Shown: positions 37,237 to 64,000, numbered from the stretch's first letter. The stretch: DNA of 64,000 bases from Blastocladiella emersonii ATCC 22665 (GCA_025594325.1 JANHCV010000014.1:1178001-1242000); one strand, 5' to 3'. The notes: generated by a model from the sequence alone, not told the origin. Numbers and translations are program-made.

Positions 37237-39013
37237 CGCCTGCCCAACACGGCCTTTTTTTTGGAACCTTTGATTTATTCCTTAACAGCGGTTGTAACCT
37301 GCAAGCAGAGTATCCACTGTACGACAGGCGCCGGCCTTTTCTGGCCGAGCTGCAATTCAGCAAGGCCTGGACCACGCACGTCGAGGAGCAAAGGGGAAGC
37401 AGTGAGGGAAGGAGAGAAGATAGGACAAACGGACGGAGCAAATCAGACCAGTAGCGTCAAACGAGCAGTAGCGAGAGAGAGAGAGCGAATGAACAATAAT
37501 CGAGACCGAGCAGGGCGACATGCTGGGCTGGCCAGCGAGAGAGCGAGGGCACGCCAGAAAGCCAGTAGCAGTACTGTGGCTTTGGCCGTGGCCCGAGAGG
37601 AATGTCAGTTTTTCTTTTTCTTCTTCTGTTTTGTCTTTTCTTCTTCAGTTTTGTCTTTTCTTTTCTTTTCTTTTGTGTCAATCAATGCACCGATGGGCAT
37701 GATTCAGCGACGACCACGCGGTTCCTTTGGACTTGTCACTTCAGGATGTGCCTTGGGGAGCCGAGCAGCCAAAGACGGACGGAGGGATCTGCAGCAAGAG
37801 CCGCCTGGGCCGCAGTGGTGGGCGGGCACACGGGCGGGTCTTCTTCACGCCCAGAGGGGTTGGGGGCGTGGGAGTGCATCGAGTGCAAGCACCGCGTGCA
37901 GTAGTGGTGTTTGTTGATGAACTTGAGGGTGGCCCTGTGTTGACCAAATGGACGTCGGACGCGTGCGCTCGCCTCGCGGGGCGGAGCGTCGGAAAAGTTG
38001 AGCGGGTCGACCTCGGCGCACCCAGCGGCGTGAGGGAGCCAGCCGAGTCGCCAGAGGGAGCGCGAGGCCACGGAGGTGATGGCCGCGAGGACGGGCCGGG
38101 TGAGGGCGCGGTCGAGTTGGAGGGCCCGCGAGCCGAACGATACGTCGCGGACGCGTAGAACGCAGCCGGCGAGGCGGGAGAGGGCGTCGGGGTCGCGCCA
38201 GATGGAGGCTGCGAGTCGAGTGCCAAAGTTGTGGAGGGCGTCAGTTGCGCCAGCAATGGACTCGCCGACCATGGTGTAGCCGGGCGTGCTGAGGTCCTCG
38301 CCTTGGATAGGAGAGAGAGGCGGTGGTGGTGCAGATGGGGGTGTAGGTGGAGTGGGCGCATTTGGTGCTCGTGCAGTGGAGGCGGCGGCGGCAGTAGCGG
38401 CGGCGGCGGCAGTAGCGGCGGCGGCGGTGGCAACAGAGGCAGCGGCGCGGCGAGCATAGCGCTCAATGGACTTTTGGGCAGAGCCCAGCGCGGCGCACAC
38501 GGCCGCGGCGTTACGGGTGCAGATCATCCAGTGGCTTCCGTCGTCAATGGCTACTTGGCACCTAGGACACACCGGTGAAGTGACTACAGTAGGATGGCGG
38601 GCGTGCAGAAGTGAGCGAGTGGGTGTGATCCCAAGGAGGTGGCGAACGCGATAGACGATGTCGCGGTTCGCAGCGCTGGAGGTGCGCTTATCGAGCGGGC
38701 GGGAGCCGGAGCCAATGGCCAGTGAGGTCGCAAGCATGTCAGGGTGCTCATCGGGGTCAGGGGAGGTGTGGAGGGAGGAGAGGAGGGCGGACTTGGAGCG
38801 CAGGGTCGCATCGCAGCGTGCAGTGGACAGGATCTTGAGGAATGCAGTGGAGGATGTGGGAACGGGGACGTCATCAAAATACAGCGCATGCTGAACATCT
38901 AACCGGATCTGTTTGGCGAAGGGGGGAGCGAGGACGAGCTCTTGGGCCAGATTGACCCCGTCAGCGGCGAGCCCGTCAGCGATCTCGTTCCCCTCAACGC
39001 CTGCCCAACACGG
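37237..39013. other. 16-bp target-site duplication CGCCTGCCCAACACGG (37237-37252 and 38998-39013)
   Basis: Exact direct repeat flanking the minus-strand LINE fragment. Confidence 0.95.
37253..38997 (-). mobile_element. 5'-truncated non-LTR retrotransposon (family A): RNase H tail + CCHC zinc finger, 3' UTR and poly(A)
   Basis: Open frame 38995->37736 begins EGNEIADGLA (RNase H C-terminal motif) and contains TPTRSLLH...CPRC...H..C. AATAAA at 37279-37274 (minus), A8 tail at 37262-37255, 16-bp TSD. Confidence 0.92.
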
Positions 39014-40362
39014 TCAAGGTGGCGTCTCTAACGCTGTACTGGCTCGCGCCGACTGGGTCGCCGCAACTGCCGTCACCGGGCAGAGCCGCCTGCTGGCCGG
39101 CGTCTCTCGAGTCGCTGACGCTGGGCGACTGCGAACTCGGCATTACCAGCTCGCTGATCCGGCACCTGATCCCGAGCAACGGCCACGGCGGTGTCGGCAA
39201 CACCGCTCCACTCGCGACCCTCACCACTTTGCGCCTCTTCGACTGCGACATCCTCGGGTGCTCGGCCGCGCGCACGCTCGCCGAGTTGCTCCCGCCTAAC
39301 CTCAAGGACCTGACCCTCAGCAACGCGGGGCTGCACGGCGACTCGCTGGCCGCGCTCCTGGCCGCGATCCCCTCGTCGGTCACGCTGTGGTCGCTAGACC
39401 TGAGCCGCAACGACCTGCGGTGCCTCGAGCGGGTCCTCCTGAACCTGCCTGGCCAAGCCCCGTGCTTCGTTATCGCAGGCCCCACCGAGGATGGGGACGC
39501 GGCAGACGTGGTGGCGTCGGCGCACCTGGTCGACGGCGACGCGTGGCCGCTGCCGCGGACGCTCCGGAACCTCGACCTGACCGGGTGCACCCTCGGTCCC
39601 CGCGCGACACGCGGGCTCGCAGCTGGCCTGCCGCCGCACCTGCGCGAACTTGTCATGAAGAACTGCCTCATAACGGAGCAGGCTCACGTGGTGACGGCGC
39701 CCGTCACCGAGGCGCAGTCGGCCCTCTTCCTTGCGCTACCGCCCACCCTGCTCGTGCTCGACCTCAGCGGCGAGACGTGGACCGCGTCGGCCATGACCGC
39801 GCTGATGGCGTCGCTTCAGCACTATCATCACCACCACCACCAGCAGCTCAAGGTGCTCCGGCTCGCGGGGTCCTCGCTGCCGCCCGGGGCGACCGCGGTC
39901 GTGGTCGCGCACCTCCCGCCTGCCCTGCGCATGCTCGATCTGCAGGGCTTCGTGTTCACCGCGCAGCATGCCCAAGTGCTGGCCGCCTGGCGCGTGGTTC
40001 GCGGTGCTGCTGCTGCTTTGAACTTGCAGCTGGACGTAAGCCAGCGGACCGCGCCCGTCTCGGCTGCCCTCGCAGCGGCGCACCCACCGGTTGTCATTGG
40101 CTAGACTCTCCTCATTGTTGTATATTGAGTTTGTTGCACCGCTCCCTTCCTTCCCCCTTCCTTCATAGCTCATAACCATACCATTGCATATCGCTGCCTC
40201 GAGCTCTGGTCCTTCAACCCACAAAGTCGCTGTCGTATCGTGTCGGCGTGGCACAGCGAGCACTTCAAGCCAGAGACGGCGTTCTGATGCCGACCCTCAT
40301 CCCACGCGAATCTGAAACGCGACGCGGCGCCACGGGTGGCGCAGTTGGCCGCGTCTCGCTCA

Positions 40363-43300
40363 CCTCCGGAAACGACTTCTACTCGTTCTACTCGAACGAC
40401 GTAGCCGTCTCGCGCATTGACGGGGTCTGGGCCTCGAGCGCTTTCATCCCGCGGTGCTTGTCCGCGACAATTGCACATGACCTCCGTGTCCTGCTGGACC
40501 ATGCGCCGGTTTTTGCCACCTTTGATTTCGAGGACCACCTGGACCGCACCATCACCGCCAGGGAGGCGCAGGCCATGAGCGAGATGGGCCGCAGGTTGGC
40601 GGACTGGACCAAGATTACCGAGCGGGAGCTGGCAGCTTTTGCCCTGCTGCTTTCCTCGCTGATCCTCAAGTGCCCGAGCCTCAGGGCGTCCCGCGTCTTT
40701 GCCTCGGCTGGCGACGTGCACGATGCTGCCCGCGCTTGGGTTGCCCGCATCGTGAAAGCGATGCAGCAGTCCCTCCCGCTCCGTCACGTTGGGCAGAAGC
40801 GCAAGTCCCGGCCTGCGGACCCAACCGACCCGACCTTAGCCGTGATCGGTTTACTGCGCCACGCCCAGGTCGCGATCAAGCGGGGCTCCTACGCTTCGCC
40901 CATGGACGCGCTCCTGGCTATCCGCCCTGCCTACAACGCCGAGATTTCGCCAGAGCCCTTCCCGGACTCGGCCGCGACCATGGACGAGGTGAGCGCGGCG
41001 ATCCACGGGCTTCTGTCGGACCACATCGGTGCTTTGCAGGCGCGGCGCGCGGCTGACGTTCGCACTCGGATTTCCGCTGCTGTTGAGAGCCGGGCCGGCT
41101 GGCTTGACTCGGCGCCCGGCGCCCTCCTTCGTTCTGCTCTTGGCGTTGAGCGCTCGCGCGCTGAGATCAACATCGCCGCCCTGCCGCAGGGCGAGGACGA
41201 CGCCACGGGCGCGCAGGCCCAATCACACACGCGCGATCCCGACCTGGTCAAGTCGGCGCTCGCTGGCCAGCTGCAGTCCATGTTTGCAGAAGGCGCTGAT
41301 CCGCTTCCGCTTAACTCGGCACGTCCGGGTTGGGCCAACATTTTCGCTCCGCTCTCGCACGTCCCCGACGACGCGTACGAGGGCCTCATGGACCCGCCTT
41401 CCATGGAGGAATTGCTCGACGCGCTCTCAGCTTCCGGCGGGACCAAGGCCCCCGGCCCGTCCAGGATCCAGACAAAGCTGATCCTCGAGTCGGGCGACGA
41501 GTCGCTCGAAGCCCTTCACCGCATCGTCTGCGGGTGCTTCACCTTCCGCACCATGCCACCGGCGTTCAAGGAGTCCCTCGTGGTCATGATCCCAAAAACC
41601 AGCGACCCCTTCTCTGGCGACTTGAGCCAGCTCCGGCCTATCACGCTGCTTGAGGTGATGCAGAAGGCGATTGTCCGAATCTTCACGAGGCGTCTCACGG
41701 CCACTTTCCTGAAGCACAAAGTCCTTCGCGGCGCGTGTGACAGCGTACTTCCTGGAACGAGCTCAGACGGAATCGTCAGCGCTGTGAGCGCCATTGTCAC
41801 GTGGGCTAACGCGGAGCCTGGACGCGAAGCTTTCATGTACTTCGAAGACAAGAGCAAGGCTTACGACTCCATCGGTTTCGAGGTGGTACGGCGTGCCTTG
41901 CGCCGGCTCAAAGTCCCCGAGCCCTTCGTCGAGTTCTACGTGACCCACGTCCTCAGCTCTCGCTCAGTCTCGCTCTTGACAGATTTTGGTCCGACAAACG
42001 CGGTGCCCATTGGCCGCGGCCTGCCTCAGGGCGGCGTCGAGTGCCCGCTCTTGTGGGACGTAGTGTACGACCCGCTTCTCTGCGCGCTCAAGGAGTGGAC
42101 GGCGGGAGTTGAGATTTCTGTCGACCCGCCCGCAGTGCACCCGCGCTCAGGCCACGCCGTCGCCACGCCGCCGCCGCCGCCGGTGACCATGCGTGCCCAC
42201 GCCTTTGCTTTTGTCGACGACCTCACTGTGGTCGCGAGCTCGCTCGAGGAGCTTGGCCACGGAGCCGCGATTGTCTCCGAGTTCAACGCTCTCAACGGCC
42301 TCCGCGCAAACCCAAGCAAGGGCATGGTCCTGCGCGCGGGACAGTCGGCCAGCGACGCCAAGGTGTTCAAGGTGGGCGACGAGGAGGTCCGCATCCTTGG
42401 GCCAAAGGAGCCAGCCCGCCTTCTCGGCGTGTGGTTCAGCGGGAACGGCAGCAACGCGGCCACATTTGAGGTGATCCAGCGCGAGAGCCAGGCTGTGCTC
42501 GACGCCATGGAGTTTCGGCGCCTCACGGCGCGATCAGTGGTGTACGCCCTGAACGCAGTCGGCATCCCGCGCGCGCTGTACCGGGCAAAGGCCGCGATCC
42601 CGCTCATTACCCAGCTTGAAGGGCTGGATGCCAAGTTCCGCGGCCTCGTCCGCCGAAAACTCCGTGTCGCTTCCAGCTCGCCCTCGGCGCCGCTTCACTC
42701 GACGGTTGCCCTTGGCCTTCGCTCAATTGTGGACTGCCTGGTAGAGCAGCAGGTGACCGAGATCACGATTGGGCTCTCGACAGACGGTCTCCTTGGCGAC
42801 GCAAGCCGGGTGCTCCTGGCGCTGCTGCAGCGGCATCTTTGGATCCCGGTCTCTCCGCTCGAGGTGCCAACTGGCGAGCGCGTCTTCCCGTCGCAGCACC
42901 CATGGGGCCAGCTCACGTCTCTCATGCACGACCGTGGCCTCTCGATTCGGGACGAGCACGGCTTGTTCCGCTCGAACCAGGGCAGCTTGCCGCTGGTCGA
43001 GGTGCTCCCGTGGTCTCTGCTGGGTCCGCTCCGCAAGTCGCTCAAGCACTACGGGATCCTCTTCGCTTCGCAGCTGGTGGGCCCAGGTGGCGACGTCCTA
43101 GCCAACCTTGCTTTCTCGCGCGCTCACGGCCTGGCAACCGCAAGAACGAAGTGGTTCCCACTCGTGAACACGGCGCTGACCGCGACCCTCAACGCGTCGC
43201 CAGCCCTGCGCTTGGAGGCCAGCAGGAAGTCCATCGCGTGGAGTCTGCCCGGCGACAACGGCGCAGCCCTCGGGCTGCTGGATCGGGCTGCGGTGACGGG

Positions 43301-45668
43301 TGGAGGCCTTTTTGACTTCGCTTCCGCGAGCGGGGTGCCCTTCCATGGCCGCGTCGTCATGGCGCCCAACATAGTTTCCTCGGCCGCTGTGCTCCTGGTC
43401 AACCACGTTCTCACCGGCGACGATGGCGCCGTTGCGGCCTGCAGTGGGTGCGACTTTGTAACCCCGATCCCCGCTCGCTCGCCTTCCGGCAAGGAGTACA
43501 GCGGGGTCCCGCGCTTCATGCGGGGCCGGGGAAGGTGCTGGCACTACGCCAAGCTGGCGCCTGCTGCGGGTGCGCACCCAGTGGACGCCCGCGCCGACCT
43601 GGCCGCGCTTCGGCTGATCGACCTCTCGACGCTCTCTGATCCAGTGGAATTCGCGCGCCTCGCGCTTTCGCTTGAGCTTCCCGAGGACTTTGTGGGCGTC
43701 GGCTCGGGCGAGATATTCTCAGATGGCTCGCTCAAGGGCGCGGGCACCGAGGCCGTGGCTGCTGGTGCAGGCGTCTGCACGGTCGACCGCGAGGAGGACT
43801 TTGAGAGGAGCTTCGCAGTCCCTGCCAGCAACCACTCAAGTTTCCGGTCCGAGCTCTGGGGCGTCATCGCGGCTGCCTCGGTGGCCAGACGCGGGGCCTC
43901 GCTCACCATCACTTTGGACAACAAGGGTGTGGTCGACACTGCGGTCAAGATGCTTGCGCCCAGCGCGCGCGTCAAGATCCGCGCAACGTGCTCGCTGGAA
44001 TGGGCCGTGCTCCGTTGGATCGTGGAGGCGCGCAACCTCAAGATAGCTTTACAGTGGACGCGCGGGCACGTCGGCACCAAGGGCAACGAGGTGGCGGCCG
44101 GCCTGGCCAACGCAGGAACGCAGCCCGGCGTTGCCCCCCTCGCCATCAATCCAGCAATCCGCCGGCTCTTTGATGCGCCCTTCACGGTGATGTGGCGCGG
44201 CCAGGCCATCAACACGGACCCGCGGCGCTTTGCGCGCGGCCTCAACAACGCGCGGCACAGCGCCGTGCTGACAACCGTGACCGCGGCCAGCGTCACGCGC
44301 GCTCCCGTCGACATCCCCGCGACCGCGATCGCGCTGCGCGGCGGGCCCCGTCGCGTCCGCGGCAGCGAGTCCTTTTCGGCCAATGCTACCCTGAGCTTCC
44401 AGCTCAAGGCCCTCGCCGGCCAGCTGCCCACCCGCCATCGCTTGCACTCATGGTGGCCGCACCGCTACCCGTCCGAGGACTGCGTGGAGTGCTCGGCCCT
44501 CGGCCACTCCATCCCTGACACGCAGGCGCATTTCTTCGCGTGCCCAGCCTCGCTGGCCCGTGTGCCCGAGGCTGCGGAGGCGGCCTTCCCTTATGTCGCC
44601 GGCACTCTCAAAACAATCGACGACGACACGCACGCTGACCCCACGCTGCGCAGGGCCGCGCGCGAGATGGTCATGGAGCTTCTGCGCGACGGCCGCATCG
44701 AGCGCACCGCAGCAGGCCTGGTGGACTCGTCGCTCGTCGGCTGGTTCCGCAGATGCTACGGTCACATGCGGGGCTTCCCGTCCGCCCGGCTAGCACTCTC
44801 CGCTGCTGCGGCTGCCTGCTCGACCGCGATCCGCAAGGAAGTGTGGCTGCCCCGGTGCCAGGCGGTGGCCGAGGCCTCGCCAGTCGTGCACGGCCCGGCG
44901 TTGCCGCCGCCCGCCCGGCCTGATCCGTCGCCGCCGCGGCGGGCGCCCCTCACCCGCGCGAAGCGCGCGGCCGATGGCTACGCGCCGTGCTGCCTCGCCC
45001 CGCTCGCTGACCCTGACGATGGCTGCTGCGCCGCGGGAAACCCGCGGCGAAAGGCAGTGGCCCTCGCTGACGCAGCGGTGGCCCGCCGACACAACGGCGG
45101 AACCCTCGCTGCGCACCCGGCCCTCCGACCAGTATTCGGGATCCCCGTCAACGACGACGGCTCCCCGCCAACCGTCGGGCCGGCCCTGACCCTTTTTGAC
45201 CCCCTGCATGGCTCGTGGATCGACGCCCGCGTCGCCCCGCGACTCGGCGACTGGCAAGTCGCTGAGGACCCTGGCTTCCCGCCAGGGCCGCCGTAGCGCA
45301 TCCCTGCACCACCGGGCGCGTCTGGACTAGGCCTAGTCTAGCTCGCGCCTGGAGGGTGTGCGGCGACATGCGCTGAGCTGCGGAGCACGCTCACACGCTC
45401 CGCTACCGCCAGGTGGGTCGAGATTTGGGGCAGCCGGGTTGGAGGGTTCTCGGCCTCGGGCCGGTCTCCCTGCCAGCCTCCCTGCCTCCGCGCGCGCCCA
45501 GCCCCATAGGTTTTTCTCCTGTTGTGCTGCCGTTCGTGAGCTCTGTTTGGTGACTGTGTGGTGACGATGAGTTGTTTTTGTCTTTCCTTTGCATTTTTCC
45601 TCCTCTAGCACGTGAATACACCTGGGCGAATTTTCAAAAAAAAAAAAAAAACCTCCGGAAACGACTTC
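40363..45668. other. 17-bp (18 with the flanking A) target-site duplication CCTCCGGAAACGACTTC (40363-40379 and 45652-45668)
   Basis: Exact direct repeat; the second copy immediately follows the poly(A). Confidence 0.95.
40380..45651 (+). mobile_element. 5'-truncated LINE (family B): end of APE, RT, RNase H, CCHC zinc finger, 3' UTR and A16 tail
   Basis: Uninterrupted ORF to 45296. SRIDGVW...DHAPV (APE C-terminus only), LRPITLLE, EDKSKAYDSI, GLPQGGVECPLL, AFVDDL (RT), FSDGS/SELW/LDNK/GHVG.KGNE (RNase H), LPTRHRL...CVEC...H..C. Poly(A) at 45636-45651 and a TSD. Confidence 0.96.
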
Positions 45669-45896
45669 GCAATCCGGAACTTGCTCATCCATCGTATCCG
45701 ATTCCAACGTCATGTTCGCACCGTATACCATTCTTCGTCGCGACAAAGGCACGGAGGACGACCAAGACTTGAGAATTGACTCGCTGAACAGGCGTGAGCT
45801 AGACTAGGATTAGTCCAAACGCGCCCGGTGGTGCAGGGATGCGCTACGGCGGCCCCAGCGGGAAGCCAGGGTCCTCAGCGACTTGCACCTCGCCGA
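45244..45896. repeat. 108-bp inverted repeat pair (45244-45351 and 45789-45896), about 92% identical, each arm able to form multiple hairpins
   Basis: Manual alignment: 9 substitutions and no indels in 108 bp; flanks do not align. Confidence 0.92.
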
Positions 45897-46349
45897 CCCT
45901 CTTTCTCACCCAAAGTAGGGCCCTTGTGCAGCTCGTTGTACGATAGAGCCTTACCAGCTTCGTATCGACGATCAAGTTGTCCCAACCATCAACATCCGCG
46001 AGGCCTTTAGCGCAGGCCTTCAAGTCAAGCAAATTCCGAATCAGGTGGGCCAGCTGAGGACGGCGTCGGGTCATCCCGCGTTGGAGCAGGCGTGTGATTC
46101 CCGACAATTGGTGTTCGTCTGTCAGCGCGCGTCTAGCCTGGCGGAGCCTCTTCTATGCGGGCCGAGGCGCGCGCGATCGCGGTCGCGGTCGCCGCGGCAC
46201 CACCGCGCTCGCGGACCCACATCTACTCTGGCTCTCAGGCTGTCATTGCATCCGAGTCGGCCATCCGCGACCTATCGTTTCATTCCTCCTCTTCGTCTGA
46301 TTCTGGCTTTCCTTCTTCTCTCAGTTCTACCAACGCATGGTCGCTTGCA
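45669..46349 (-). mobile_element. Probable decayed 3' portion of an older related non-LTR element (minus strand), whose 3' UTR was the insertion target of family B
   Basis: ORF 45844-46107 ends RVGEVQVAEDPGFPLGPP*, versus RLGDWQVAEDPGFPPGPP* in family B, and shares the 108-bp block. The upstream frame has a stop. No tail or TSD identified. Confidence 0.45.
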
Positions 46350-46732
46350 GTGTGTGACGCCGGCGTGGCCGTTTGCGCCGTGTGCGCAGCGCGTGGTGCG
46401 TCGGGCGCTGTGCGGTGTGCGCGGTGCGCGGTGCGCGGTGTGCATCCGTCAGCGGGTGAGTGGTTTCACGCCGAGGGAGAGCGGAGCTGCTCGTAACCCT
46501 CCCTGGCCCATCATCACGCAGGACTTGGAGCTGACAGCAGAGCCGGCAGCAAGGAGGAGACCAGCCGTATATTGCCTGACGAACACCTCTCAGACCACCT
46601 ACGAGATAGATAAGAGCAACTGACTGGGAGCTGGCAGGCTGGCAGTCTGCCAGGCTGCCAGGGCTCATCATTCATTCCTTTGTTTGCAGGGACGGCAACC
46701 AGAGTGTGCGGGCCCACCATGGCTTGAGATGC

Positions 46733-46835
46733 GGCGTGGGTGGTTGGTTGGCTGGTTGGCTGGTTGGCTGGTTGGCTGGTTGGCTGGTTGGCTGGCAGGT
46801 TGGCTGGTTGGCTGGCAGGTTGGCAGGTCTGGCAG
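46733..46835 (+). repeat. (GGTTGGCT)n / GGCAGGTT G-rich 8-mer microsatellite in each array unit (first copy given)
   Basis: Direct reading; two 8-mers are missing in the second unit. Confidence 0.9.
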
Positions 46836-46992
46836 GTTGTCTTTTGGCTCGTTGATTGGACCGTTCGCTTTGCCGACGGGTTCAATAATTGGAGGAGGAT
46901 CGAAGAGTTGGATAGTGGAGTGTGCGCAAAGTGGTAGATTTGGACATCTGCCGGTCTGGGTGCTTGCCCACCTGGACGTGAGGGTATTCGAA

Positions 46993-47930
46993 GATCTGAA
47001 GATGGTTTGTTTGAGTACCATGACAATAATCAGCGTGGCGAGTTTGATACAACCGGAACATCAGATACTATGTTGTTGGTTCGATACTGTGATTTATAGG
47101 TCCTTGCCCACCAGATCATGGGGGGTGTGCGAAGATTTGAATATGGTTTTGTTTTGGTACTATGACGATTACCTACGTGGCTGGTTTACTATATTCCCAT
47201 GGTCAGATAATTCGTTACGTCGATATTACGATTTATTGGTCCCCAACCAGCTGGACATGCAGGAAGTCAAAGACTTGAACATGGTTTTGTTTGAGTGCTC
47301 TGACAATTATCTGCGTGGCTTGTTTATTATATTCCCATGTTCAGATATTTTGTTGAGTCGATATTACGATTTATGGGTGCCTGGCTAGCTGGTCATGCGG
47401 GTGGTCAAGGATTTGAATATGGTTTTGTTTGAGTACCATGACAATTGTCGGAGTGGCTCGTTTACAATATTGCTCTGCCCAGATTCATGGTTGCTTCGAT
47501 ACTGTAATTTATAGGAGCCAGGCTAGCTGGACATGCGGGAAGTCAAAGATGTGAGTACGGTTTTGTTTGAGTTCTCTGACAATTATCTGCGTGGCTTGTT
47601 TAGTATATTCCCATGTTCAGATATTTTGTTGAGTCGATATTACGATTTATGGGTCCCCAACGAGGTGGACATGCAGGAAGTCAACAACTTGAATATGGTT
47701 TTGTTTCGGTACTATGACAATTACGTACGTGGCTGGGTTACTATATTCCCATGGTCAGATATTTTGGTGGTTCGATACTGTGATTTATGGGTTCCTGGCT
47801 AGCTGGTCATGCGGGTGGTCAAGGATTTGAATATGGTTTTGTTTGAGTACCATGAGAATCATGTACGTGGCTGGTTTGGTACATCCCAAACATCGGCTAA
47901 TTTGTTTCGTGCATGTTGCGATTTGTGGGG
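46993..47930 (+). repeat. Seven diverged 138-bp AT-rich monomers in each unit (first unit given)
   Basis: Monomer starts at 46993, 47134, 47272, 47410, 47548, 47686 and 47824 (141 bp, then exact 138-bp spacing). Conserved ATGGTTTTGTTT and CGATA(T/C)T..GATTTA boxes. Monomer 5 hand count is 57/138 = 41% GC. Confidence 0.93.
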
Positions 47931-48344
47931 GGTCGGATTGGGCCGGACGTTGGCTGCAGCAAGGTCCCTCGGTCAAAATTCGACACAGTTGCTCCCCCTC
48001 CCTCTCTGTCATGCAGATAGTGGGTGGTGGCCGACCCATCCTGACCGCGCGCGGCCCGTATGAAGGTCCGCATCCACCCATCCATCCATCCATCCATTCA
48101 TTCAACACTCACTCCATCACGCACCTTTTCACTTGTGTTGTTTGCCAGCCAGCTAGACAGCTAGCCAGGTAGCCAGGTAGCCAGATCCTGCTGCTGCTAC
48201 CTACCTACCCTGCCTCCAACAACGCCCGCCGCGTCATGAGCCAGGCAGGGCCGTGCCGCGACAAATGGCCGCGGCAGGCGTGTACGGTAATTGTACCTGT
48301 ACCATACTTTCCATGGCCGCCCCGCCACCCTGACTTGGTCCTTG

Positions 48345-48411
48345 TATGTCACTTGGTCACCTTGGTCACCTTGGTCACTTGGTCACTTGGTCACTTGGTC
48401 ACTTGGTCACT
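48345..48411 (+). repeat. (TGGTCACT)n 8-mer microsatellite in each array unit (first copy given)
   Basis: Direct reading; two extra 8-mers near 58600 and 61180. Confidence 0.9.
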
Positions 48412-51400
48412 TTGCGCGTGTGATGGTGGACGAGTGAGTCCAGGCATGCACGCACAAAAGCCCGCACGCCCACGTGTACTCCTGCCAGGAGCGCCTGGTG
48501 TGGGTCATTCACCCACCATTCAGTTAGTAGTCCCTAGCACTCCTTGGCCTTGGTACTGTCTCCTGCAGGAGGAGCCCTGCCGCGTTAGCCCTCTGCAGCC
48601 CTCTGCAGCACTCTGCAGCACTCTGTCGCCGTACGGCCGCTGCCCTGTTTGCAACGTACGTTGGCCAGGGCGAGGCAGGTGCTGTGTTGTTGCTTGCCAC
48701 TTGGCTGCCACCAAGTGCAGGCGCACCCATCGCAAAGCGTTCTGATGGACCCCGCGGCCATGAAAGCATGGGGCAGCACTGGACATGAATGAATCAAGCA
48801 ATTGATGGCACTCGGAGGGCAGGCAGGCGCACCCGTTGGCGCAAGCAGACCTGGAGGATGGATCATTCTTGAGTTCAGGAAGCCTTGCCTGCCCGCCGTT
48901 CATGCGAGCGTGTGTGTGACACCAGCGTGGCCGTTTGCGCCGTGTGCGCAGCGCGTGGTGCGTCGGGCGCTGTGCGGTGTGCGCGGTGCGCGGTGCGCGG
49001 TGTGCATCCGTCAGCGGGTGAGTGGTTTCACGCCGAGGGAGAGCGGAGCTGCTCGTAACCCTCCCTGGCCCATCATCACGCAGGACTTGGAGCTGACAGC
49101 AGAGCCGGCAGCAAGGAGGAGACCAGCCGTATATTGCCTGACGAACACCTCTCAGACCACCTACGAGATAGATAAGAGCAACTGACTGGGAGCTGGCAGG
49201 CTGGCAGTCTGCCAGGCTGCCAGGGCTCATCATTCATTCCTTTGTTTGCAGGGACGGCAACCAGAGTGTGCGGGCCCACCATGGCTTGAGATGCGGCGTG
49301 GGTGGTTGGTTGGCTGGTTGGCTGGTTGGCTGGTTGGCTGGCAGGTTGGCTGGTTGGCTGGCAGGTTGGCAGGTCTGGCAGGTTGTCTTTTGGCTCGTTG
49401 ATTGGACCGTTCGCTTTGCCGACGGGTTCAATAATTGGAGGAGGATCGAAGAGTTGGATAGTGGAGTGTGCGCAAAGTGGTAGATTTGGACATCTGCCGG
49501 TCTGGGTGCTTGCCCACCTGGACGTGAGGGTATTCGAAGGTCTGAAGATGGTTTGTTTGAGTACCATGACAATAATCAGCGTGGCGAGTTTGATACAACC
49601 GGAACATCAGATACTATGTTGTTGGTTCGATACTGTGATTTATAGGTCCTTGCCCACCAGATCATGGGGGGTGTGCGAAGATTTGAATATGGTTTTGTTT
49701 TGGTACTATGACGATTACCTACGTGGCTGGTTTACTATATTCCCATGGTCAGATAATTTGTTACGTCGATATTACGATTTATTGGTCCCCAACCAGCTGG
49801 ACATGCAGGAAGTCAAAGACTTGAACATGGTTTTGTTTGAGTGCTCTGACAATCATCTGCGTGGCTTGTTTATTATATTCCCATGTTCAGATATTTTGTT
49901 GAGTCGATATTACGATTTATGGGTGCCTGGCTAGCTGGTCATGCGGGTGGTCAAGGATTTGAATATGGTTTTGTTTGAGTACCATGACAATTGTCGGAGT
50001 GGCTCGTTTACAATATTGCTCTGCCCAGATTCATGGTTGCTTCGATACTGTAATTTATAGGAGCCAGGCTAGCTGGACATGCGGGAAGTCAAAGATGTGA
50101 GTACGGTTTTGTTTGAGTTCTCTGACAATTATCTGCGTGGCTTGTTTAGTATATTCCCATGTTCAGATATTTTGTTGAGTCGATATTACGATTTATGGGT
50201 CCCCAACGAGGTGGACATGCAGGAAGTCAACAACTTGAATATGGTTTTGTTTCGGTACTATGACAATTACGTACGTGGCTGGGTTACTATATTCCCATGG
50301 TCAGATATTTTGGTGGTTCGATACTGTGATTTATGGGTTCCTGGCTAGCTGGTCATGCGGGTGGTCAAGGATTTGAATATGGTTTTGTTTGAGTACCATG
50401 AGAATCATGTACGTGGCTGGTTTGGTACATCCCAAACATCGGCTAATTTGTTTCGTGCATGTTGCGATTTGTGGGGGGTCGGATTGGGCCGGACGTTGGC
50501 TGCAGCAAGGTCCCTCGGTCAAAATTCGACACAGTTGCTCCCCCTCCCTCTCTGTCATGCAGATAGTGGGTGGTGGCCGACCCATCCTGACCGCGCGCGG
50601 CCCGTATGAAGGTCCGCATCCACCCATCCATCCATCCATCCATTCATTCAACACTCACTCCATCACGCACCTTTTCACTTGTGTTGTTTGCCAGCCAGCT
50701 AGACAGCTAGCCAGGTAGCCAGGTAGCCAGATCCTGCTGCTGCTACCTACCTACCCTGCCTCCAACAACGCCCGCCGCGTCATGAGCCAGGCAGGGCCGT
50801 GCCGCGACAAATGGCCGCGGCAGGCGTGTACGGTAATTGTACCTGTACCATACTTTCCATGGCCGCCCCGCCACCCTGACTTGGTCCTTGTATGTCACTT
50901 GGTCACCTTGGTCACCTTGGTCACTTGGTCACTTGGTCACTTGGTCACTTGGTCACTTTGCGCGTGTGATGGTGGACGAGTGAGTCCAGGCATGCACGCA
51001 CAAAAGCCCGCACGCCCACGTGTACTCCTGCCAGGAGCGCCTGGTGTGGGTCATTCACCCACCATTCAGTTAGTAGTCCCTAGCACTCCTTGGCCTTGGT
51101 ACTGTCTCCTGCAGGAGGAGCCCTGCCGCGTTAGCCCTCTGCAGCCCTCTGCAGCACTCTGCAGCACTCTGTCGCCGTACGGCCGCTGCCCTGTTTGCAA
51201 CGTACGTTGGCCAGGGCGAGGCAGGTGCTGTGTTGTTGCTTGCCACTTGGCTGCCACCAAGTGCAGGCGCACCCATCGCAAAGCGTTCTGATGGACCCCG
51301 CGGCCATGAAAGCATGGGGCAGCACTGGACATGAATGAATCAAGCAATTGATGGCACTCGGAGGGCAGGCAGGCGCACCCGTTGGCGCAAGCAGACCTGG

Positions 51401-54400
51401 AGGATGGATCATTCTTGAGTTCAGGAAGCCTTGCCTGCCCGCCGTTCATGCGAGCGTGTGTGTGACACCAGCGTGGCCGTTTGCGCCGTGTGCGCAGCGC
51501 GTGGTGCGTCGGGCGCTGTGCGGTGTGCGCGGTGCGCGGTGCGCGGTGTGCATCCGTCAGCGGGTGAGTGGTTTCACGCCGAGGGAGAGCGGAGCTGCTC
51601 GTAACCCTCCCTGGCCCATCATCACGCAGGACTTGGAGCTGACAGCAGAGCCGGCAGCAAGGAGGAGACCAGCCGTATATTGCCTGACGAACACCTCTCA
51701 GACCACCTACGAGATAGATAAGAGCAACTGACTGGGAGCTGGCAGGCTGGCAGTCTGCCAGGCTGCCAGGGCTCATCATTCATTCCTTTGTTTGCAGGGA
51801 CGGCAACCAGAGTGTGCGGGCCCACCATGGCTTGAGATGCGGCGTGGGTGGTTGGTTGGCTGGTTGGCTGGTTGGCTGGTTGGCTGGTTGGCTGGTTGGC
51901 TGGCAGGTTGGCTGGTTGGCTGGCAGGTTGGCAGGTCTGGCAGGTTGTCTTTTGGCTCGTTGATTGGACCGTTCGCTTTGCCGACGGGTTCAATAATTGG
52001 AGGAGGATCGAAGAGTTGGATAGTGGAGTGTGCGCAAAGTGGTAGATTTGGACATCTGCCGGTCTGGGTGCTTGCCCACCTGGACGTGAGGGTATTCGAA
52101 GGTCTGAAGATGGTTTGTTTGAGTACCATGACAATAATCAGCGTGGCGAGTTTGATACAACCGGAACATCAGATACTATGTTGTTGGTTCGATACTGTGA
52201 TTTATAGGTCCTTGCCCACCAGATCATGGGGGGTGTGCGAAGATTTGAATATGGTTTTGTTTTGGTACTATGACGATTACCTACGTGGCTGGTTTACTAT
52301 ATTCCCATGGTCAGATAATTTGTTACGTCGATATTACGATTTATTGGTCCCCAACCAGCTGGACATGCAGGAAGTCAAAGACTTGAACATGGTTTTGTTT
52401 GAGTGCTCTGACAATTATCTGCGTGGCTTGTTTATTATATTCCCATGTTCAGATATTTTGTTGAGTCGATATTACGATTTATGGGTGCCTGGCTAGCTGG
52501 TCATGCGGGTGGTCAAGGATTTGAATATGGTTTTGTTTGAGTACCATGACAATTGTCGGAGTGGCTCGTTTACAATATTGCTCTGCCCAGATTCATGGTT
52601 GCTTCGATACTGTAATTTATAGGAGCCAGGCTAGCTGGACATGCGGGAAGTCAAAGATGTGAGTACGGTTTTGTTTGAGTTCTCTGACAATTATCTGCGT
52701 GGCTTGTTTAGTATATTCCCATGTTCAGATATTTTGTTGAGTCGATATTACGATTTATGGGTCCCCAACGAGGTGGACATGCAGGAAGTCAACAACTTGA
52801 ATATGGTTTTGTTTGGGTACTATGACAATTACGTACGTGGCTGGGTTACTATATTCCCATGGTCAGATACTTTGGTGGTTCGATACTGTGATTTATGGGT
52901 TCCTGGCTAGCTGGTCATGCGGGTGGTCAAGGATTTGAATATGGTTTTGTTTGAGTACCATGAGAATCATGTACGTGGCTGGTTTGGTACATCCCAAACA
53001 TCGGCTAATTTGTTTCGTGCATGTTGCGATTTGTGGGGGGTCGGATTGGGCCGGACGTTGGCTGCAGCAAGGTCCCTCGGTCAAAATTCGACACAGTTGC
53101 TCCCCCTCCCTCTCTGTCATGCAGATAGTGGGTGGTGGCCGACCCATCCTGACCGCGCGCGGCCCGTATGAAGGTCCGCATCCACCCATCCATCCATCCA
53201 TCCATTCATTCAACACTCACTCCATCACGCACCTTTTCACTTGTGTTGTTTGCCAGCCAGCTAGACAGCTAGCCAGGTAGCCAGGTAGCCAGATCCTGCT
53301 GCTGCTACCTACCTACCCTGCCTCCAACAACGCCCGCCGCGTCATGAGCCAGGCAGGGCCGTGCCGCGACAAATGGCCGCGGCAGGCGTGTACGGTAATT
53401 GTACCTGTACCATACTTTCCATGGCCGCCCCGCCACCCTGACTTGGTCCTTGTATGTCACTTGGTCACCTTGGTCACCTTGGTCACTTGGTCACTTGGTC
53501 ACTTGGTCACTTGGTCACTTTGCGCGTGTGATGGTGGACGAGTGAGTCCAGGCATGCACGCACAAAAGCCCGCACGCCCACGTGTACTCCTGCCAGGAGC
53601 GCCTGGTGTGGGTCATTCACCCACCATTCAGTTAGTAGTCCCTAGCACTCCTTGGCCTTGGTACTGTCTCCTGCAGGAGGAGCCCTGCCGCGTTAGCCCT
53701 CTGCAGCCCTCTGCAGCACTCTGCAGCACTCTGTCGCCGTACGGCCGCTGCCCTGTTTGCAACGTACGTTGGCCAGGGCGAGGCAGGTGCTGTGTTGTTG
53801 CTTGCCACTTGGCTGCCACCAAGTGCAGGCGCACCCATCGCAAAGCGTTCTGATGGACCCCGCGGCCATGAAAGCATGGGGCAGCACTGGACATGAATGA
53901 ATCAAGCAATTGATGGCACTCGGAGGGCAGGCAGGCGCACCCGTTGGCGCAAGCAGACCTGGAGGATGGATCATTCTTGAGTTCAGGAAGCCTTGCCTGC
54001 CCGCCGTTCATGCGAGCGTGTGTGTGACACCAGCGTGGCCGTTTGCGCCGTGTGCGCAGCGCGTGGTGCGTCGGGCGCTGTGCGGTGTGCGCGGTGCGCG
54101 GTGCGCGGTGTGCATCCGTCAGCGGGTGAGTGGTTTCACGCCGAGGGAGAGCGGAGCTGCTCGTAACCCTCCCTGGCCCATCATCACGCAGGACTTGGAG
54201 CTGACAGCAGAGCCGGCAGCAAGGAGGAGACCAGCCGTATATTGCCTGACGAACACCTCTCAGACCACCTACGAGATAGATAAGAGCAACTGACTGGGAG
54301 CTGGCAGGCTGGCAGTCTGCCAGGCTGCCAGGGCTCATCATTCATTCCTTTGTTTGCAGGGACGGCAACCAGAGTGTGCGGGCCCACCATGGCTTGAGAT

Positions 54401-57400
54401 GCGGCGTGGGTGGTTGGTTGGCTGGTTGGCTGGTTGGCTGGTTGGCTGGTTGGCTGGTTGGCTGGCAGGTTGGCTGGTTGGCTGGCAGGTTGGCAGGTCT
54501 GGCAGGTTGTCTTTTGGCTCGTTGATTGGACCGTTCGCTTTGCCGACGGGTTCAATAATTGGAGGAGGATCGAAGAGTTGGATAGTGGAGTGTGCGCAAA
54601 GTGGTAGATTTGGACATCTGCCGGTCTGGGTGCTTGCCCACCTGGACGTGAGGGTATTCGAAGGTCTGAAGATGGTTTGTTTGAGTACCATGACAATAAT
54701 CAGCGTGGCGAGTTTGATACAACCGGAACATCAGATACTATGTTGTTGGTTCGATACTGTGATTTATAGGTCCTTGCCCACCAGATCATGGGGGGTGTGC
54801 GAAGATTTGAATATGGTTTTGTTTTGGTACTATGACGATTACCTACGTGGCTGGTTTACTATATTCCCATGGTCAGATAATTTGTTACGTCGATATTACG
54901 ATTTATTGGTCCCCAACCAGCTGGACATGCAGGAAGTCAAAGACTTGAACATGGTTTTGTTTGAGTGCTCTGACAATTATCTGCGTGGCTTGTTTATTAT
55001 ATTCCCATGTTCAGATATTTTGTTGAGTCGATATTACGATTTATGGGTGCCTGGCTAGCTGGTCATGCGGGTGGTCAAGGATTTGAATATGGTTTTGTTT
55101 GAGTACCATGACAATTGTCGGAGTGGCTCGTTTACAATATTGCTCTGCCCAGATTCATGGTTGCTTCGATACTGTAATTTATAGGAGCCAGGCTAGCTGG
55201 ACATGCGGGAAGTCAAAGATGTGAGTACGGTTTTGTTTGAGTTCTCTGACAATTATCTGCGTGGCTTGTTTAGTATATTCCCATGTTCAGATATTTTGTT
55301 GAGTCGATATTACGATTTATGGGTCCCCAACGAGGTGGACATGCAGGAAGTCAACAACTTGAATATGGTTTTGTTTGGGTACTATGACAATTACGTACGT
55401 GGCTGGGTTACTATATTCCCATGGTCAGATATTTTGGTGGTTCGATACTGTGATTTATGGGTTCCTGGCTAGCTGGTCATGCGGGTGGTCAAGGATTTGA
55501 ATATGGTTTTGTTTGAGTACCATGAGAATCATGTACGTGGCTGGTTTGGTACATCCCAAACATCGGCTAATTTGTTTCGTGCATGTTGCGATTTGTGGGG
55601 GGTCGGATTGGGCCGGACGTTGGCTGCAGCAAGGTCCCTCGGTCAAAATTCGACACAGTTGCTCCCCCTCCCTCTCTGTCATGCAGATAGTGGGTGGTGG
55701 CCGACCCATCCTGACCGCGCGCGGCCCGTATGAAGGTCCGCATCCACCCATCCATCCATCCATCCATTCATTCAACACTCACTCCATCACGCACCTTTTC
55801 ACTTGTGTTGTTTGCCAGCCAGCTAGACAGCTAGCCAGGTAGCCAGGTAGCCAGATCCTGCTGCTGCTACCTACCTACCCTGCCTCCAACAACGCCCGCC
55901 GCGTCATGAGCCAGGCAGGGCCGTGCCGCGACAAATGGCCGCGGCAGGCGTGTACGGTAATTGTACCTGTACCATACTTTCCATGGCCGCCCCGCCACCC
56001 TGACTTGGTCCTTGTATGTCACTTGGTCACCTTGGTCACCTTGGTCACTTGGTCACTTGGTCACTTGGTCACTTGGTCACTTTGCGCGTGTGATGGTGGA
56101 CGAGTGAGTCCAGGCATGCACGCACAAAAGCCCGCACGCCCACGTGTACTCCTGCCAGGAGCGCCTGGTGTGGGTCATTCACCCACCATTCAGTTAGTAG
56201 TCCCTAGCACTCCTTGGCCTTGGTACTGTCTCCTGCAGGAGGAGCCCTGCCGCGTTAGCCCTCTGCAGCCCTCTGCAGCACTCTGCAGCACTCTGTCGCC
56301 GTACGGCCGCTGCCCTGTTTGCAACGTACGTTGGCCAGGGCGAGGCAGGTGCTGTGTTGTTGCTTGCCACTTGGCTGCCACCAAGTGCAGGCGCACCCAT
56401 CGCAAAGCGTTCTGATGGACCCCGCGGCCATGAAAGCATGGGGCAGCACTGGACATGAATGAATCAAGCAATTGATGGCACTCGGAGGGCAGGCAGGCGC
56501 ACCCGTTGGCGCAAGCAGACCTGGAGGATGGATCATTCTTGAGTTCAGGAAGCCTTGCCTGCCCGCCGTTCATGCGAGCGTGTGTGTGACACCAGCGTGG
56601 CCGTTTGCGCCGTGTGCGCAGCGCGTGGTGCGTCGGGCGCTGTGCGGTGTGCGCGGTGCGCGGTGCGCGGTGTGCATCCGTCAGCGGGTGAGTGGTTTCA
56701 CGCCGAGGGAGAGCGGAGCTGCTCGTAACCCTCCCTGGCCCATCATCACGCAGGACTTGGAGCTGACAGCAGAGCCGGCAGCAAGGAGGAGACCAGCCGT
56801 ATATTGCCTGACGAACACCTCTCAGACCACCTACGAGATAGATAAGAGCAACTGACTGGGAGCTGGCAGGCTGGCAGTCTGCCAGGCTGCCAGGGCTCAT
56901 CATTCATTCCTTTGTTTGCAGGGACGGCAACCAGAGTGTGCGGGCCCACCATGGCTTGAGATGCGGCGTGGGTGGTTGGTTGGCTGGTTGGCTGGTTGGC
57001 TGGTTGGCTGGTTGGCTGGTTGGCTGGCAGGTTGGCTGGTTGGCTGGCAGGTTGGCAGGTCTGGCAGGTTGTCTTTTGGCTCGTTGATTGGACCGTTCGC
57101 TTTGCCGACGGGTTCAATAATTGGAGGAGGATCGAAGAGTTGGATAGTGGAGTGTGCGCAAAGTGGTAGATTTGGACATCTGCCGGTCTGGGTGCTTGCC
57201 CACCTGGACGTGAGGGTATTCGAAGGTCTGAAGATGGTTTGTTTGAGTACCATGACAATAATCAGCGTGGCGAGTTTGATACAACCGGAACATCAGATAC
57301 TATGTTGTTGGTTCGATACTGTGATTTATAGGTCCTTGCCCACCAGATCATGGGGGGTGTGCGAAGATTTGAATATGGTTTTGTTTTGGTACTATGACGA

Positions 57401-63400: not shown

Positions 63401-64000
63401 GCAGATAGTGGGTGGTGGCCGACCCATCCTGACCGCGCGCGGCCCGTATGAAGGTCCGCATCCACCCATCCATCCATCCATCCATTCATTCAACACTCAC
63501 TCCATCACGCACCTTTTCACTTGTGTTGTTTGCCAGCCAGCTAGACAGCTAGCCAGGTAGCCAGGTAGCCAGATCCTGCTGCTGCTACCTACCTACCCTG
63601 CCTCCAACAACGCCCGCCGCGTCATGAGCCAGGCAGGGCCGTGCCGCGACAAATGGCCGCGGCAGGCGTGTACGGTAATTGTACCTGTACCATACTTTCC
63701 ATGGCCGCCCCGCCACCCTGACTTGGTCCTTGTATGTCACTTGGTCACCTTGGTCACCTTGGTCACTTGGTCACTTGGTCACTTGGTCACTTGGTCACTT
63801 TGCGCGTGTGATGGTGGACGAGTGAGTCCAGGCATGCACGCACAAAAGCCCGCACGCCCACGTGTACTCCTGCCAGGAGCGCCTGGTGTGGGTCATTCAC
63901 CCACCATTCAGTTAGTAGTCCCTAGCACTCCTTGGCCTTGGTACTGTCTCCTGCAGGAGGAGCCCTGCCGCGTTAGCCCTCTGCAGCCCTCTGCAGCACT

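What the first reader, a model, noticed from the sequence alone, without database searches (positions are those of the whole stretch)
45244..45896. Conserved 108-nt structured RNA element spanning the RT stop codon, repeated in inverted orientation
Seen: 45244-45351 and the reverse complement of 45789-45896 differ at only 9 of 108 positions, while both flanks are unrelated. The sense strand folds into GGCGA/UCGCU, CCCUGGC-uuccc-GCCAGGG and a long GGGCGCG..CUGGACUAG/CUAGUCUAG..CGCGCCU hairpin. Three substitutions convert Watson-Crick pairs to G-U, five fall at hairpin apices and one disrupts a pair. This pattern suggests selection on RNA structure on that strand. Candidates (inference): an undescribed cis element shared between retroelement families (RT recognition, 3' processing or termination, or a novel self-cleaving ribozyme), or a small separately mobile unit. 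The inverted pair could also form a dsRNA hairpin that triggers RNAi against the family.
Basis: partly seen in the sequence, partly recalled or inferred. Interest (0 to 1): 0.75.

Follow-up and report, generated by a model that had tools for sequence, protein, structure and literature searches.

The report
LINE tail hairpins plus orphan inverted fragment
The repeated 108-base block is the end of the gene and the start of the tail of a recently inserted jumping gene (a LINE), and its inverted twin is a stray, decaying scrap of an older copy; the block does fold into three hairpins that a sister LINE subfamily also keeps, which is an ordinary kind of feature for LINEs.

Summary
In detail: 45244-45351 and the reverse complement of 45789-45896 match at 99 of 108 positions, and their flanks are unrelated. 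The left arm lies inside a young poly(A)-tailed LINE ('A', 40380-45651) with a 17-bp target-site duplication and an empty paralogous site on contig 21. Four other 5'-truncated A copies carry the same block. The right arm is the only solo copy in the genome. It lies antisense between unique DNA and a pseudogenised RNase H scrap of another LINE family (B'), so it is not the end of a second element.

Random substitutions damage the fold as much (P about 0.3-0.5), and three of the nine 'substitutions' are B'-derived junction sequence.

Selection on a sense-strand RNA structure gets moderate support from other evidence. Sister subfamily A2 has three hairpins in the same order around its stop codon. 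A covariance model built from A2 alone hits the A block at 26.4 bits, against 3.6 bits for a sequence-only model and at most 7.3 bits background. The reciprocal model was not significant.

Rfam gives no ribozyme match, no other family carries the module, and there is no sign of separate mobility. This is a new member of a known kind (LINE 3' cis-structures), of modest interest.

The parts
40380..45651 (+). LINE 'A' insertion (5'-truncated APE-RT-RNase H type non-LTR retrotransposon), ending in a poly(A) tail
   Evidence: The empty paralogous site on contig 21 joins window 40379 directly to 45652. Four other copies are 5'-truncated at different points and all run to the same 3' end. RT domain PF00078. 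Relatives carry APE, RT and RNase H domains.
40363..40379 (.). Left copy of the 17-bp target-site duplication CCTCCGGAAACGACTTC
   Evidence: Exact pattern found only at 40363 and 45652; present once at the empty site on C21.
45652..45668 (.). Right copy of the 17-bp target-site duplication
40248..45296 (+). Long ORF (1682 aa) with RT. It starts 132 nt upstream of the element's 5' end, in flanking DNA, and its stop codon TAG is at 45294-45296.
45243..45266 (+). Hairpin 1 of the module, inside the last 18 codons (CUCGGCGACU/AGUCGCUGAG)
   Evidence: MFE fold; local-fold scan z = -4.1; maps on hairpin 1 of A2 in the model alignment; pairs 11-20 and 12-19 are compensatory between A and A2.
45266..45289 (+). 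Hairpin 2 of the module (CCCUGGC-uuccc-GCCAGGG), inside the last 10 codons
45313..45351 (+). Hairpin 3 of the module: a two-tier 16-bp hairpin in the 3'UTR, starting 16 nt after the stop codon
   Evidence: Seven pairs changed on both sides between A and A2 while staying paired. The equivalent A2 hairpin is the most stable 40-nt fold in its 1-kb locus.
45545..45562 (+). Conserved 3'UTR box GTTTGGTGACTGTGTGGT, 74-91 nt before the poly(A); the only 3'UTR stretch that BLAST aligns between A and A2
45636..45651 (+). Poly(A) tail, 16 A
45652..45788 (.). Non-repeat DNA that continues window 39005-40379 across the LINE insertion. Its paralog on C21 (97%) stops matching exactly at 45788.
   Evidence: an LRR-like ORF lies in 39019-40101.
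45789..45896 (-). Orphan inverted fragment of an A-lineage LINE (module only). Positions 45789-45886 are surely A-derived (6 transitions in 98 nt); 45887-45896 overlap the B' fragment.
   Evidence: scores -2.2 bits on the A2-built model.
45889..46352 (+). Pseudogenised RNase H-domain fragment of a different LINE family (B'), with stop codons, coding sense on the + strand
   Evidence: 75-88% DNA identity to B copies; the B ORF has RT and RNase H; frame-3 translation matches B but has stops.

Best explanation
The two arms are alike because both descend from one LINE lineage ('A'), not because this locus keeps them alike.

The left arm is the native ORF end and 3'UTR start of a recent, poly(A)-tailed, TSD-flanked A insertion. 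The right arm is a 98-108-nt relic of an older A-lineage copy. It lies antisense at a junction between unique DNA and a scrap of a second LINE family, just before a satellite array, and it is decaying by transitions.

At the level of the family, the block is a three-hairpin module on the sense RNA. Two hairpins lie in the last 18 or so codons and one long hairpin lies 16 nt after the stop. Sister subfamily A2 keeps the same arrangement with many paired double changes.

Inference, not shown: the module is a cis-acting RNA structure of the LINE transcript. Most likely it is a binding or loading site for the element's own protein as translation ends (cis-preference, RNP assembly). The conserved box near the poly(A) would then mark where reverse transcription starts.
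For: Origin of the arms:
- The genome holds 6 copies of the block. Five are parts of A copies whose homology runs on to the poly(A).
- TSD and empty site on C21.
- The flanks of the right arm are identified.
- No other A-like DNA lies in the window.
- All six sure differences are transitions, and five of them are C:G to T:A if A is taken as ancestral.

Structure:
- Sense fold z = -4.3, antisense z = -2.7. In A2 the sense fold is -72.9 and the antisense -59.3 kcal/mol.
- A covariance model built from A2 only matches the A block over its full length at 26.4 bits (E about 7e-7 in 1.4 kb, 4e-5 in 94 kb).
- A sequence-only model from the same alignment gives 3.6 bits.
- The best background is 4.7 bits nearby and 7.3 bits in 13 kb of other LINE 3' regions, filters off.
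- On the model alignment 89.5% of cells are paired, against 76% in shuffles and 29-47% when partners are slid. Fifteen pairs have double changes, against 1-4 when slid.
Against: - The reciprocal model, built from A, does not recover A2 above background (9.9 bits, E 0.9).
- Only two or three independent lineages exist, so 'covariation' is essentially one A-versus-A2 comparison on an alignment fitted to the structure.
- Within A2 the older copies mostly break pairs, as expected for dead copies, and the covariation term is +1.5.
- Hairpins 1 and 2 lie in coding sequence whose amino acids (LG..W..AE.P) are conserved. This alone explains part of their conservation.
- Other equally strong hairpins lie upstream in the ORF tail, so the 108-nt limits are not the limits of the structured zone.
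- The module is 285-400 nt from the 3' end, unlike known RT-recognition stem-loops.
- How the orphan fragment arose is unresolved.
- No expression or binding data exist.
Confidence: 0.7

Rival explanations
1. One reading: both arms are kept alike by selection because the block is a cis-element shared by different retroelement families.
For: 92% identity with unrelated flanks. Three of four stem changes give G-U pairs.
Against: The pattern of differences does not differ from random (P 0.33-0.52). The right arm is not attached to any element on its strand. It scores -2.2 bits on the structure model. Family B and 12 other LINE 3' regions lack the module.
Confidence: 0.07
2. The hairpins have no function. 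They are a by-product of GC-rich, partly palindromic sequence in the poorly constrained ORF tail and 3'UTR, and A and A2 share them only through common descent.
For: The last 750 nt of A are generally hairpin-rich. The reciprocal model is not significant. There is no covariation within A2. Shuffle z-scores for A2 blocks are only about -1.9.
Against: About 23 bits of the A2-model score on A come from pairing terms. Eleven or so pairs changed on both sides between A and A2 and still pair. The sense strand is favoured through G-U pairs.
Confidence: 0.3
3. The orphan fragment was made in one step by a polymerase or reverse-transcriptase template switch (a twin-priming-like event) when the B' copy integrated or a break was repaired. 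It was not made by two later cuts in an old full insertion.
For: It is inverted relative to the adjoining 5'-truncated B' fragment. A and the B' antisense share 7 nt (TCGGCGA) at the junction. Its other end falls on the last base of hairpin 3. No other A-like DNA is nearby. Twin priming with microhomology joins is described for L1 (PMC2837659, listed).
Against: In twin priming both pieces come from one RNA, whereas here they come from two families. No TSD can be defined because B' is cut off by the satellite. The switch point sits 3 nt away from the shared 7-mer. The coincidences could be chance.
Confidence: 0.3
4. The inverted pair acts as a hairpin-RNA locus. Read-through transcripts from LINE A fold into a duplex of about 100 bp that feeds RNAi against the A family.
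For: The MFE of 45200-45940 pairs the arms (100 inter-arm pairs; duplex -232 against -108 kcal/mol for the local folds). Four Piwi-domain loci are in the genome.
Against: It needs transcription past the element's own poly(A) site. It is a single locus formed by accident. No expression or small-RNA data are available.
Confidence: 0.1
5. The block is a self-cleaving ribozyme or another known RNA family.
For: None beyond its being a compact multi-hairpin RNA in a retroelement.
Against: No Rfam 15 match at gathering score in the window, and none at E <= 10 in 45000-46000 except a chance miRNA hit outside the block. The block is internal to the transcript, not at the 5' end where LINE ribozymes act (my own knowledge).
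Confidence: 0.03

Closest known systems
3' tail stem-loops of stringent-type LINEs (zebrafish ZfL2-1/2, eel UnaL2), bound by the cognate ORF2 protein (PMC4176376, read)
   Same: A hairpin structure in the 3' part of a LINE RNA, kept within a lineage, and a plausible site of recognition by the element's own protein.
   Different: Those stem-loops lie at the very 3' tail, where reverse transcription begins, and binding was shown by assay. Here the module straddles the stop codon 285-400 nt before a poly(A) tail, has three hairpins, and nothing has been shown experimentally.
Conserved 3'UTR stem-loop proposed for human L1 and Alu (PMC5135761, listed)
   Same: A poly(A)-tailed LINE with a computationally inferred conserved stem-loop in the 3' region.
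   Different: That structure is shared with a SINE partner. No non-autonomous partner carrying this module was found here.
R2 and SART1 3'UTR RNA determinants for protein binding and TPRT (PMC11194090 and PMC7265360, listed)
   Same: Structured 3' RNA needed in cis by a non-LTR element's protein.
   Different: Those are site-specific elements of other clades whose structures lie wholly in the 3'UTR. There is no sequence or Rfam relation.
Twin-priming inversions of L1 insertions (PMC2837659, listed)
   Same: An inverted LINE piece abuts a direct 5'-truncated LINE piece, with shared bases at the join.
   Different: The two pieces come from different families, and no TSD can be defined.

Membership tests
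Non-LTR (LINE) retrotransposon insertion (left arm's host) | RT-encoding ORF | tested here: met
   PF00078 at E 5e-15; relatives have APE, RT and RNase H domains.
Non-LTR (LINE) retrotransposon insertion (left arm's host) | 3' poly(A) tail, target-site duplication and an empty site | tested here: met
   A16 at 45636-45651; 17-bp TSD; the C21 paralog lacks the insert.
Non-LTR (LINE) retrotransposon insertion (left arm's host) | Copies 5'-truncated at varied points with a common 3' end | tested here: met
   Copies of 597, 775, 842, 2224 and 5272 nt all end at the poly(A).
LINE 3' RNA recognition stem-loop (stringent type) | Hairpin conserved across related elements with compensatory changes | tested here: inconclusive
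   The A2-built model hits A at 26.4 bits against 3.6 bits for sequence alone, and 15 pairs have double changes. The reciprocal model is not significant, and only 2-3 lineages exist.
LINE 3' RNA recognition stem-loop (stringent type) | Lies at the 3' terminus next to the tail, where TPRT starts | tested here: not met
   The module ends 285 nt before the poly(A).
LINE 3' RNA recognition stem-loop (stringent type) | Bound by the cognate ORF protein and required for retrotransposition | not testable with these tools
   Needs binding and mobility assays.
Self-cleaving ribozyme families in Rfam (HDV-like, hammerhead, twister and others) | Match to a family covariance model | tested here: not met
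   No match at gathering score in 64 kb, and none at E <= 10 over the block.
Independent small mobile unit (SINE or MITE-like) | Several solo copies, each with its own insertion hallmarks | tested here: not met
   One solo copy in 32.6 Mb, with no TSD and no tail.
Twin-priming LINE inversion | Inverted and direct segments of the same element within one pair of TSDs, joined at microhomology | tested here: not met
   The segments come from families A and B'. The TSD cannot be defined. Seven nt are shared near the join.
Hairpin-RNA (inverted-repeat) RNAi source locus | Inverted repeat able to form a long duplex, in a genome with RNAi genes | tested here: met
   100 inter-arm pairs in the MFE; four Piwi-domain loci.
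Hairpin-RNA (inverted-repeat) RNAi source locus | Transcribed through both arms and yielding small RNAs | not testable with these tools
   No expression data.

The most novel reading that the evidence does not exclude
A fungal APE-RT-RNase H LINE lineage carries a three-hairpin RNA module that straddles its stop codon and is kept by compensatory evolution. The module couples the end of translation to loading of the newly made protein onto its own RNA. This would be a structural basis for cis-preference that is separate from the site near the tail where reverse transcription begins. The orphan fragment, whose 3' limit falls exactly at the foot of hairpin 3, could then be a captured cDNA of a protein-protected or processed piece of that RNA.
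Probability: 0.25. Interest if true: 0.5.

Novelty: new member of a known kind. Interest (0 to 1): 0.3.

Why it matters
The inverted repeat is explained by ordinary transposon history: a fresh LINE insertion next to a relic of an older one in a rearranged zone beside a satellite array. It needs no new biology.

What remains of interest is modest. It is a candidate cis-acting RNA structure in a poorly studied fungal LINE lineage, placed unusually across the stop codon. If protein binding were shown there, it would add a case to the question of how LINE proteins choose their own RNA.

The work also gives a dated, TSD-defined LINE insertion with an empty paralogous site, which is useful for annotating this genome's repeats.

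Tried and rejected
- A minus-strand ORF upstream of the right arm, as the end of a second RT gene. Rejected: it is the antisense of a + strand RNase H pseudogene fragment.
Rejected: 45652-45788 continues 39005-40379 and has an uninterrupted paralog on C21 that is not LINE sequence.
- Protein relatives of the ORF's C-terminal 530 aa, sought to fetch orthologous 3' ends from other species. No hits. The RT part has only relatives at 33% identity or less, too distant for an RNA comparison.
- Search for more lineages carrying the module: a genome-wide covariance-model search and a filters-off search of 12 more distant LINE 3' regions. Nothing beyond A2/A3.
- Reciprocal model built from A. Not significant; the model is in effect a single sequence, and A2 needs about 40 nt of insertions.
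- Covariation within A2. Uninformative, because the older copies are decaying.
- Stop-codon read-through role. Rejected by reading the sequence: the downstream frame is not kept among A2 copies, which differ by a 1-nt indel just after the stop.
- For the null model, the majority base of the five A copies was used at one position (88) of the 108-nt block as the baseline. No other consensus was built.

Full report
**1. The observation**

The repeat finder reports one strong inverted repeat in 43000-48000. Its arms are 45244-45351 and 45789-45896, 108 nt long, 92% complementary and 437 nt apart. The nine differences are at block positions 8, 9, 10, 40, 41, 79, 87, 88 and 102.

The left arm spans the stop codon (45294-45296) of a 1682-aa ORF with a reverse-transcriptase domain. 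None of 200 dinucleotide shuffles folds as well (z = -4.3). So the repeat and the fold are real.

**2. What the left arm belongs to**

The genome (32.6 Mb, 21 contigs, a eukaryote) holds six copies of the block. Five are in one orientation within longer homology that starts at different points and always runs to the same end, window 45651.

That end is a run of 16 A (45636-45651), followed by CCTCCGGAAACGACTTC. The same 17-mer also occurs at 40363-40379 and nowhere else in the window. Contig 21 carries a 97-98% identical paralog in which window 40379 is joined directly to 45652 with a single copy of the 17-mer.

LINE 'A' is therefore a target-primed insertion at 40380-45651, with a TSD and an empty site. 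Its ORF begins 132 nt outside the element, so this copy is 5'-truncated. Relatives of the RT part are APE + RT + RNase H proteins at 33% identity or less. The named ones come from Linnemannia and Rhizophagus. The C-terminal 530 aa have no relatives at all.

**3. What the right arm belongs to**

To the left of the right arm, 45652-45788 is the continuation of 39005-40379. This is an LRR-like, non-repeat segment found only here and on C21. The C21 paralog stops matching exactly at 45788 and runs on into unique genic DNA.

To the right, 45889-46352 matches dispersed copies of another LINE family (B) at 75-88%. In B the coding strand is the window's + strand. The B ORF has RT and RNase H domains, and the matched part is the RNase H domain. 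The window's + strand translation shows that domain with stop codons.

The apparent minus-strand ORF that runs into the right arm is thus an antisense artefact of GC-rich DNA. The first ten bases of the right arm (sense TCGGCGAGGT) match B (TCGGCGAGAT) better than A (TCGGCGACTG). The three 'substitutions' at positions 8-10 are therefore most likely junction sequence. A and the B' antisense share the 7-mer TCGGCGA there.

The surely A-derived part is 98 nt with six differences, all transitions. No other A-like DNA lies in the window, and no other solo copy lies in the genome. The right arm is an orphan relic at a join in a zone of LINE debris that ends in a 2.57-kb satellite array from 46350.

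**4. Does the arm-to-arm pattern show selection?**

No. Nine random substitutions with the same transition/transversion mix break on average 4.1 pairs, against 3 observed (P = 0.33). They cost 13.2 ± 5.9 kcal/mol of MFE, against 11.2 observed (P = 0.35). On the fixed structure they cost 15.0 ± 4.6, against 15.1 observed (P = 0.52).

For the four stem transitions, three G-U outcomes are expected 5 times in 16. The three stem differences among the young A copies (in the C9, C6b and C4 copies) are all G-to-A changes that break pairs on the sense strand, as expected for neutral decay after insertion. The right arm itself scores -2.2 bits on the structure model of section 5.

**5. Is the block a maintained RNA structure at the family level?**

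A protein search of the genome with the ORF tail found a sister subfamily, A2, about 55% identical at the C-terminus. A2 has about 14 loci, including older A3-like copies on contig 3.

The A2 ORF ends in ...RLGGWRTAEGPAEGELGAPSQLV* and the A ORF in ...RLGDWQVAEDPGFPPGPP*. The two 3'UTRs end alike, with a shared box GTTTGGTG.CTGTGTGGT shortly before the poly(A). A2 has hairpins in the same order as A: two in the last codons and a long one after the stop. The long one is the most stable 40-nt fold in its locus.

- I built a covariance model from six A2/A3 copies only, with a hand-set structure of 34 pairs. It matches the A block over the full model at 26.4 bits (E about 7e-7 in 1.4 kb, 4e-5 in 94 kb).
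- A sequence-only model from the same alignment gives 3.6 bits over a third of the block, no better than noise. About 23 bits therefore come from pairing.
- Background with filters off is at most 4.7 bits nearby, the antisense strand included. It is at most 7.3 bits in 13 kb of other LINE 3' regions.
- On the model alignment 89.5% of cells pair, against 76% in shuffles and 29-47% when partners are slid. Fifteen pairs carry double changes, against 1-4 when slid. Seven of the fifteen are in hairpin 3.
- G-U pairs make the sense strand fold better than the antisense: -60.1 against -57.5 kcal/mol in A, and -72.9 against -59.3 in A2.

Caveats:

- The alignment is fitted to the structure.
- The comparison is in effect one split (A against A2).
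- Hairpins 1 and 2 overlap conserved codons.
- There is no covariation within A2.
- The reciprocal model built from A fails to find A2 above background.
- Other strong hairpins lie upstream in the ORF tail.

I put the chance that the module is a selected sense-RNA structure at about 0.6.

**6. What it is not**

- Rfam 15 gives no match at gathering score in the window, and none over the block at E <= 10.
- Family B's true 3' end has no such module.
- A genome-wide search with the model returns only A2/A3 copies.
- Twelve further LINE 3' regions are negative.

The module is therefore not shared between families and not a separate mobile unit, and there is no sign of a ribozyme.

**7. Mechanism**

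Shown:

- The arms are copies by descent.
- The left arm sits in a young insertion.
- The right arm is an isolated, decaying fragment.

Inferred:

- The module is a cis-acting structure of the LINE RNA. Because it brackets the stop codon, the most economical role is capture of the newly made protein by its own RNA, giving cis-preference. The terminal box at 45545-45562 would be the likelier start signal for reverse transcription. Known LINE stem-loops bound by ORF2 lie at the tail (PMC4176376), so this would be a positional variant. I give the functional claim about 0.35.
- The origin of the orphan fragment is open. It may be an old copy cut twice, or a one-step template switch. For the second reading, note that it is inverted relative to the 5'-truncated B' piece, that a 7-nt shared string lies at the join, and that its other end falls on the last base of hairpin 3.
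- If a transcript ran through both arms, they would form a duplex of about 100 bp, and the genome has Piwi-domain genes. An incidental RNAi effect cannot be excluded.

**8. Verdict**

The 'shared between families', 'mobile unit' and 'ribozyme' readings are not supported. This is a new member of a known kind. Interest 0.3.

Noticed in passing
window 45545-45562 (and L057:753-775): The box GTTTGGTGACTGTGTGGT, 74-91 nt before the poly(A), is the only 3'UTR stretch that BLAST aligns between LINE subfamilies A and A2 (91%). It is a better-placed candidate for the reverse-transcription start signal than the stop-codon module.
   Followed up: partly
window 44907-44946, 45021-45060, 45438-45477: Further very stable local hairpins (down to -28 kcal/mol per 40 nt) cluster in the last 750 nt of LINE A, inside the low-complexity ORF tail and the 3'UTR. 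The structured zone is wider than the 108-nt block.
   Followed up: partly
window 40248-40379: The long RT ORF begins 132 nt upstream of the LINE's 5' end, in flanking LRR-like DNA.
   Followed up: partly
window 37255-40379 plus 45652-45788; L054 (contig 21) 1819-5048: A 3.3-kb segment (the 3' part of a B-family LINE plus LRR-like DNA) is duplicated at 97-98% between the ends of contigs 6 and 21. Both lie next to the same 2.57-kb satellite, but the segment is oriented oppositely relative to it.
   Followed up: partly
window 46350-64000; contig 2 1678275-1722272: The 2.57-kb satellite unit shares a 264-nt piece at 88% with a 3.12-kb tandem array on contig 2.
   Followed up: no
window 40248-45293, ORF residues 1150-1682: The C-terminal 530 residues of the LINE A ORF have no relative at E <= 1e-5 in the 5.8-billion-protein search, although they include an RNase H-like part and a C-x2-C...H-x4-C knuckle that align to family B.
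   Followed up: partly
G000 contig 17: 1404132-1405055 and 1586553-1587476: Two Piwi-domain loci with identical scores and open-frame lengths lie 182 kb apart, which suggests a recent segmental duplication of an Argonaute-like gene.
   Followed up: no
L065 (contig 2: 1351277-1351838): An A2 copy has an internal deletion that joins hairpin 2 directly to the last 110 nt or so of the 3'UTR, so it lacks hairpin 3.
   Followed up: no
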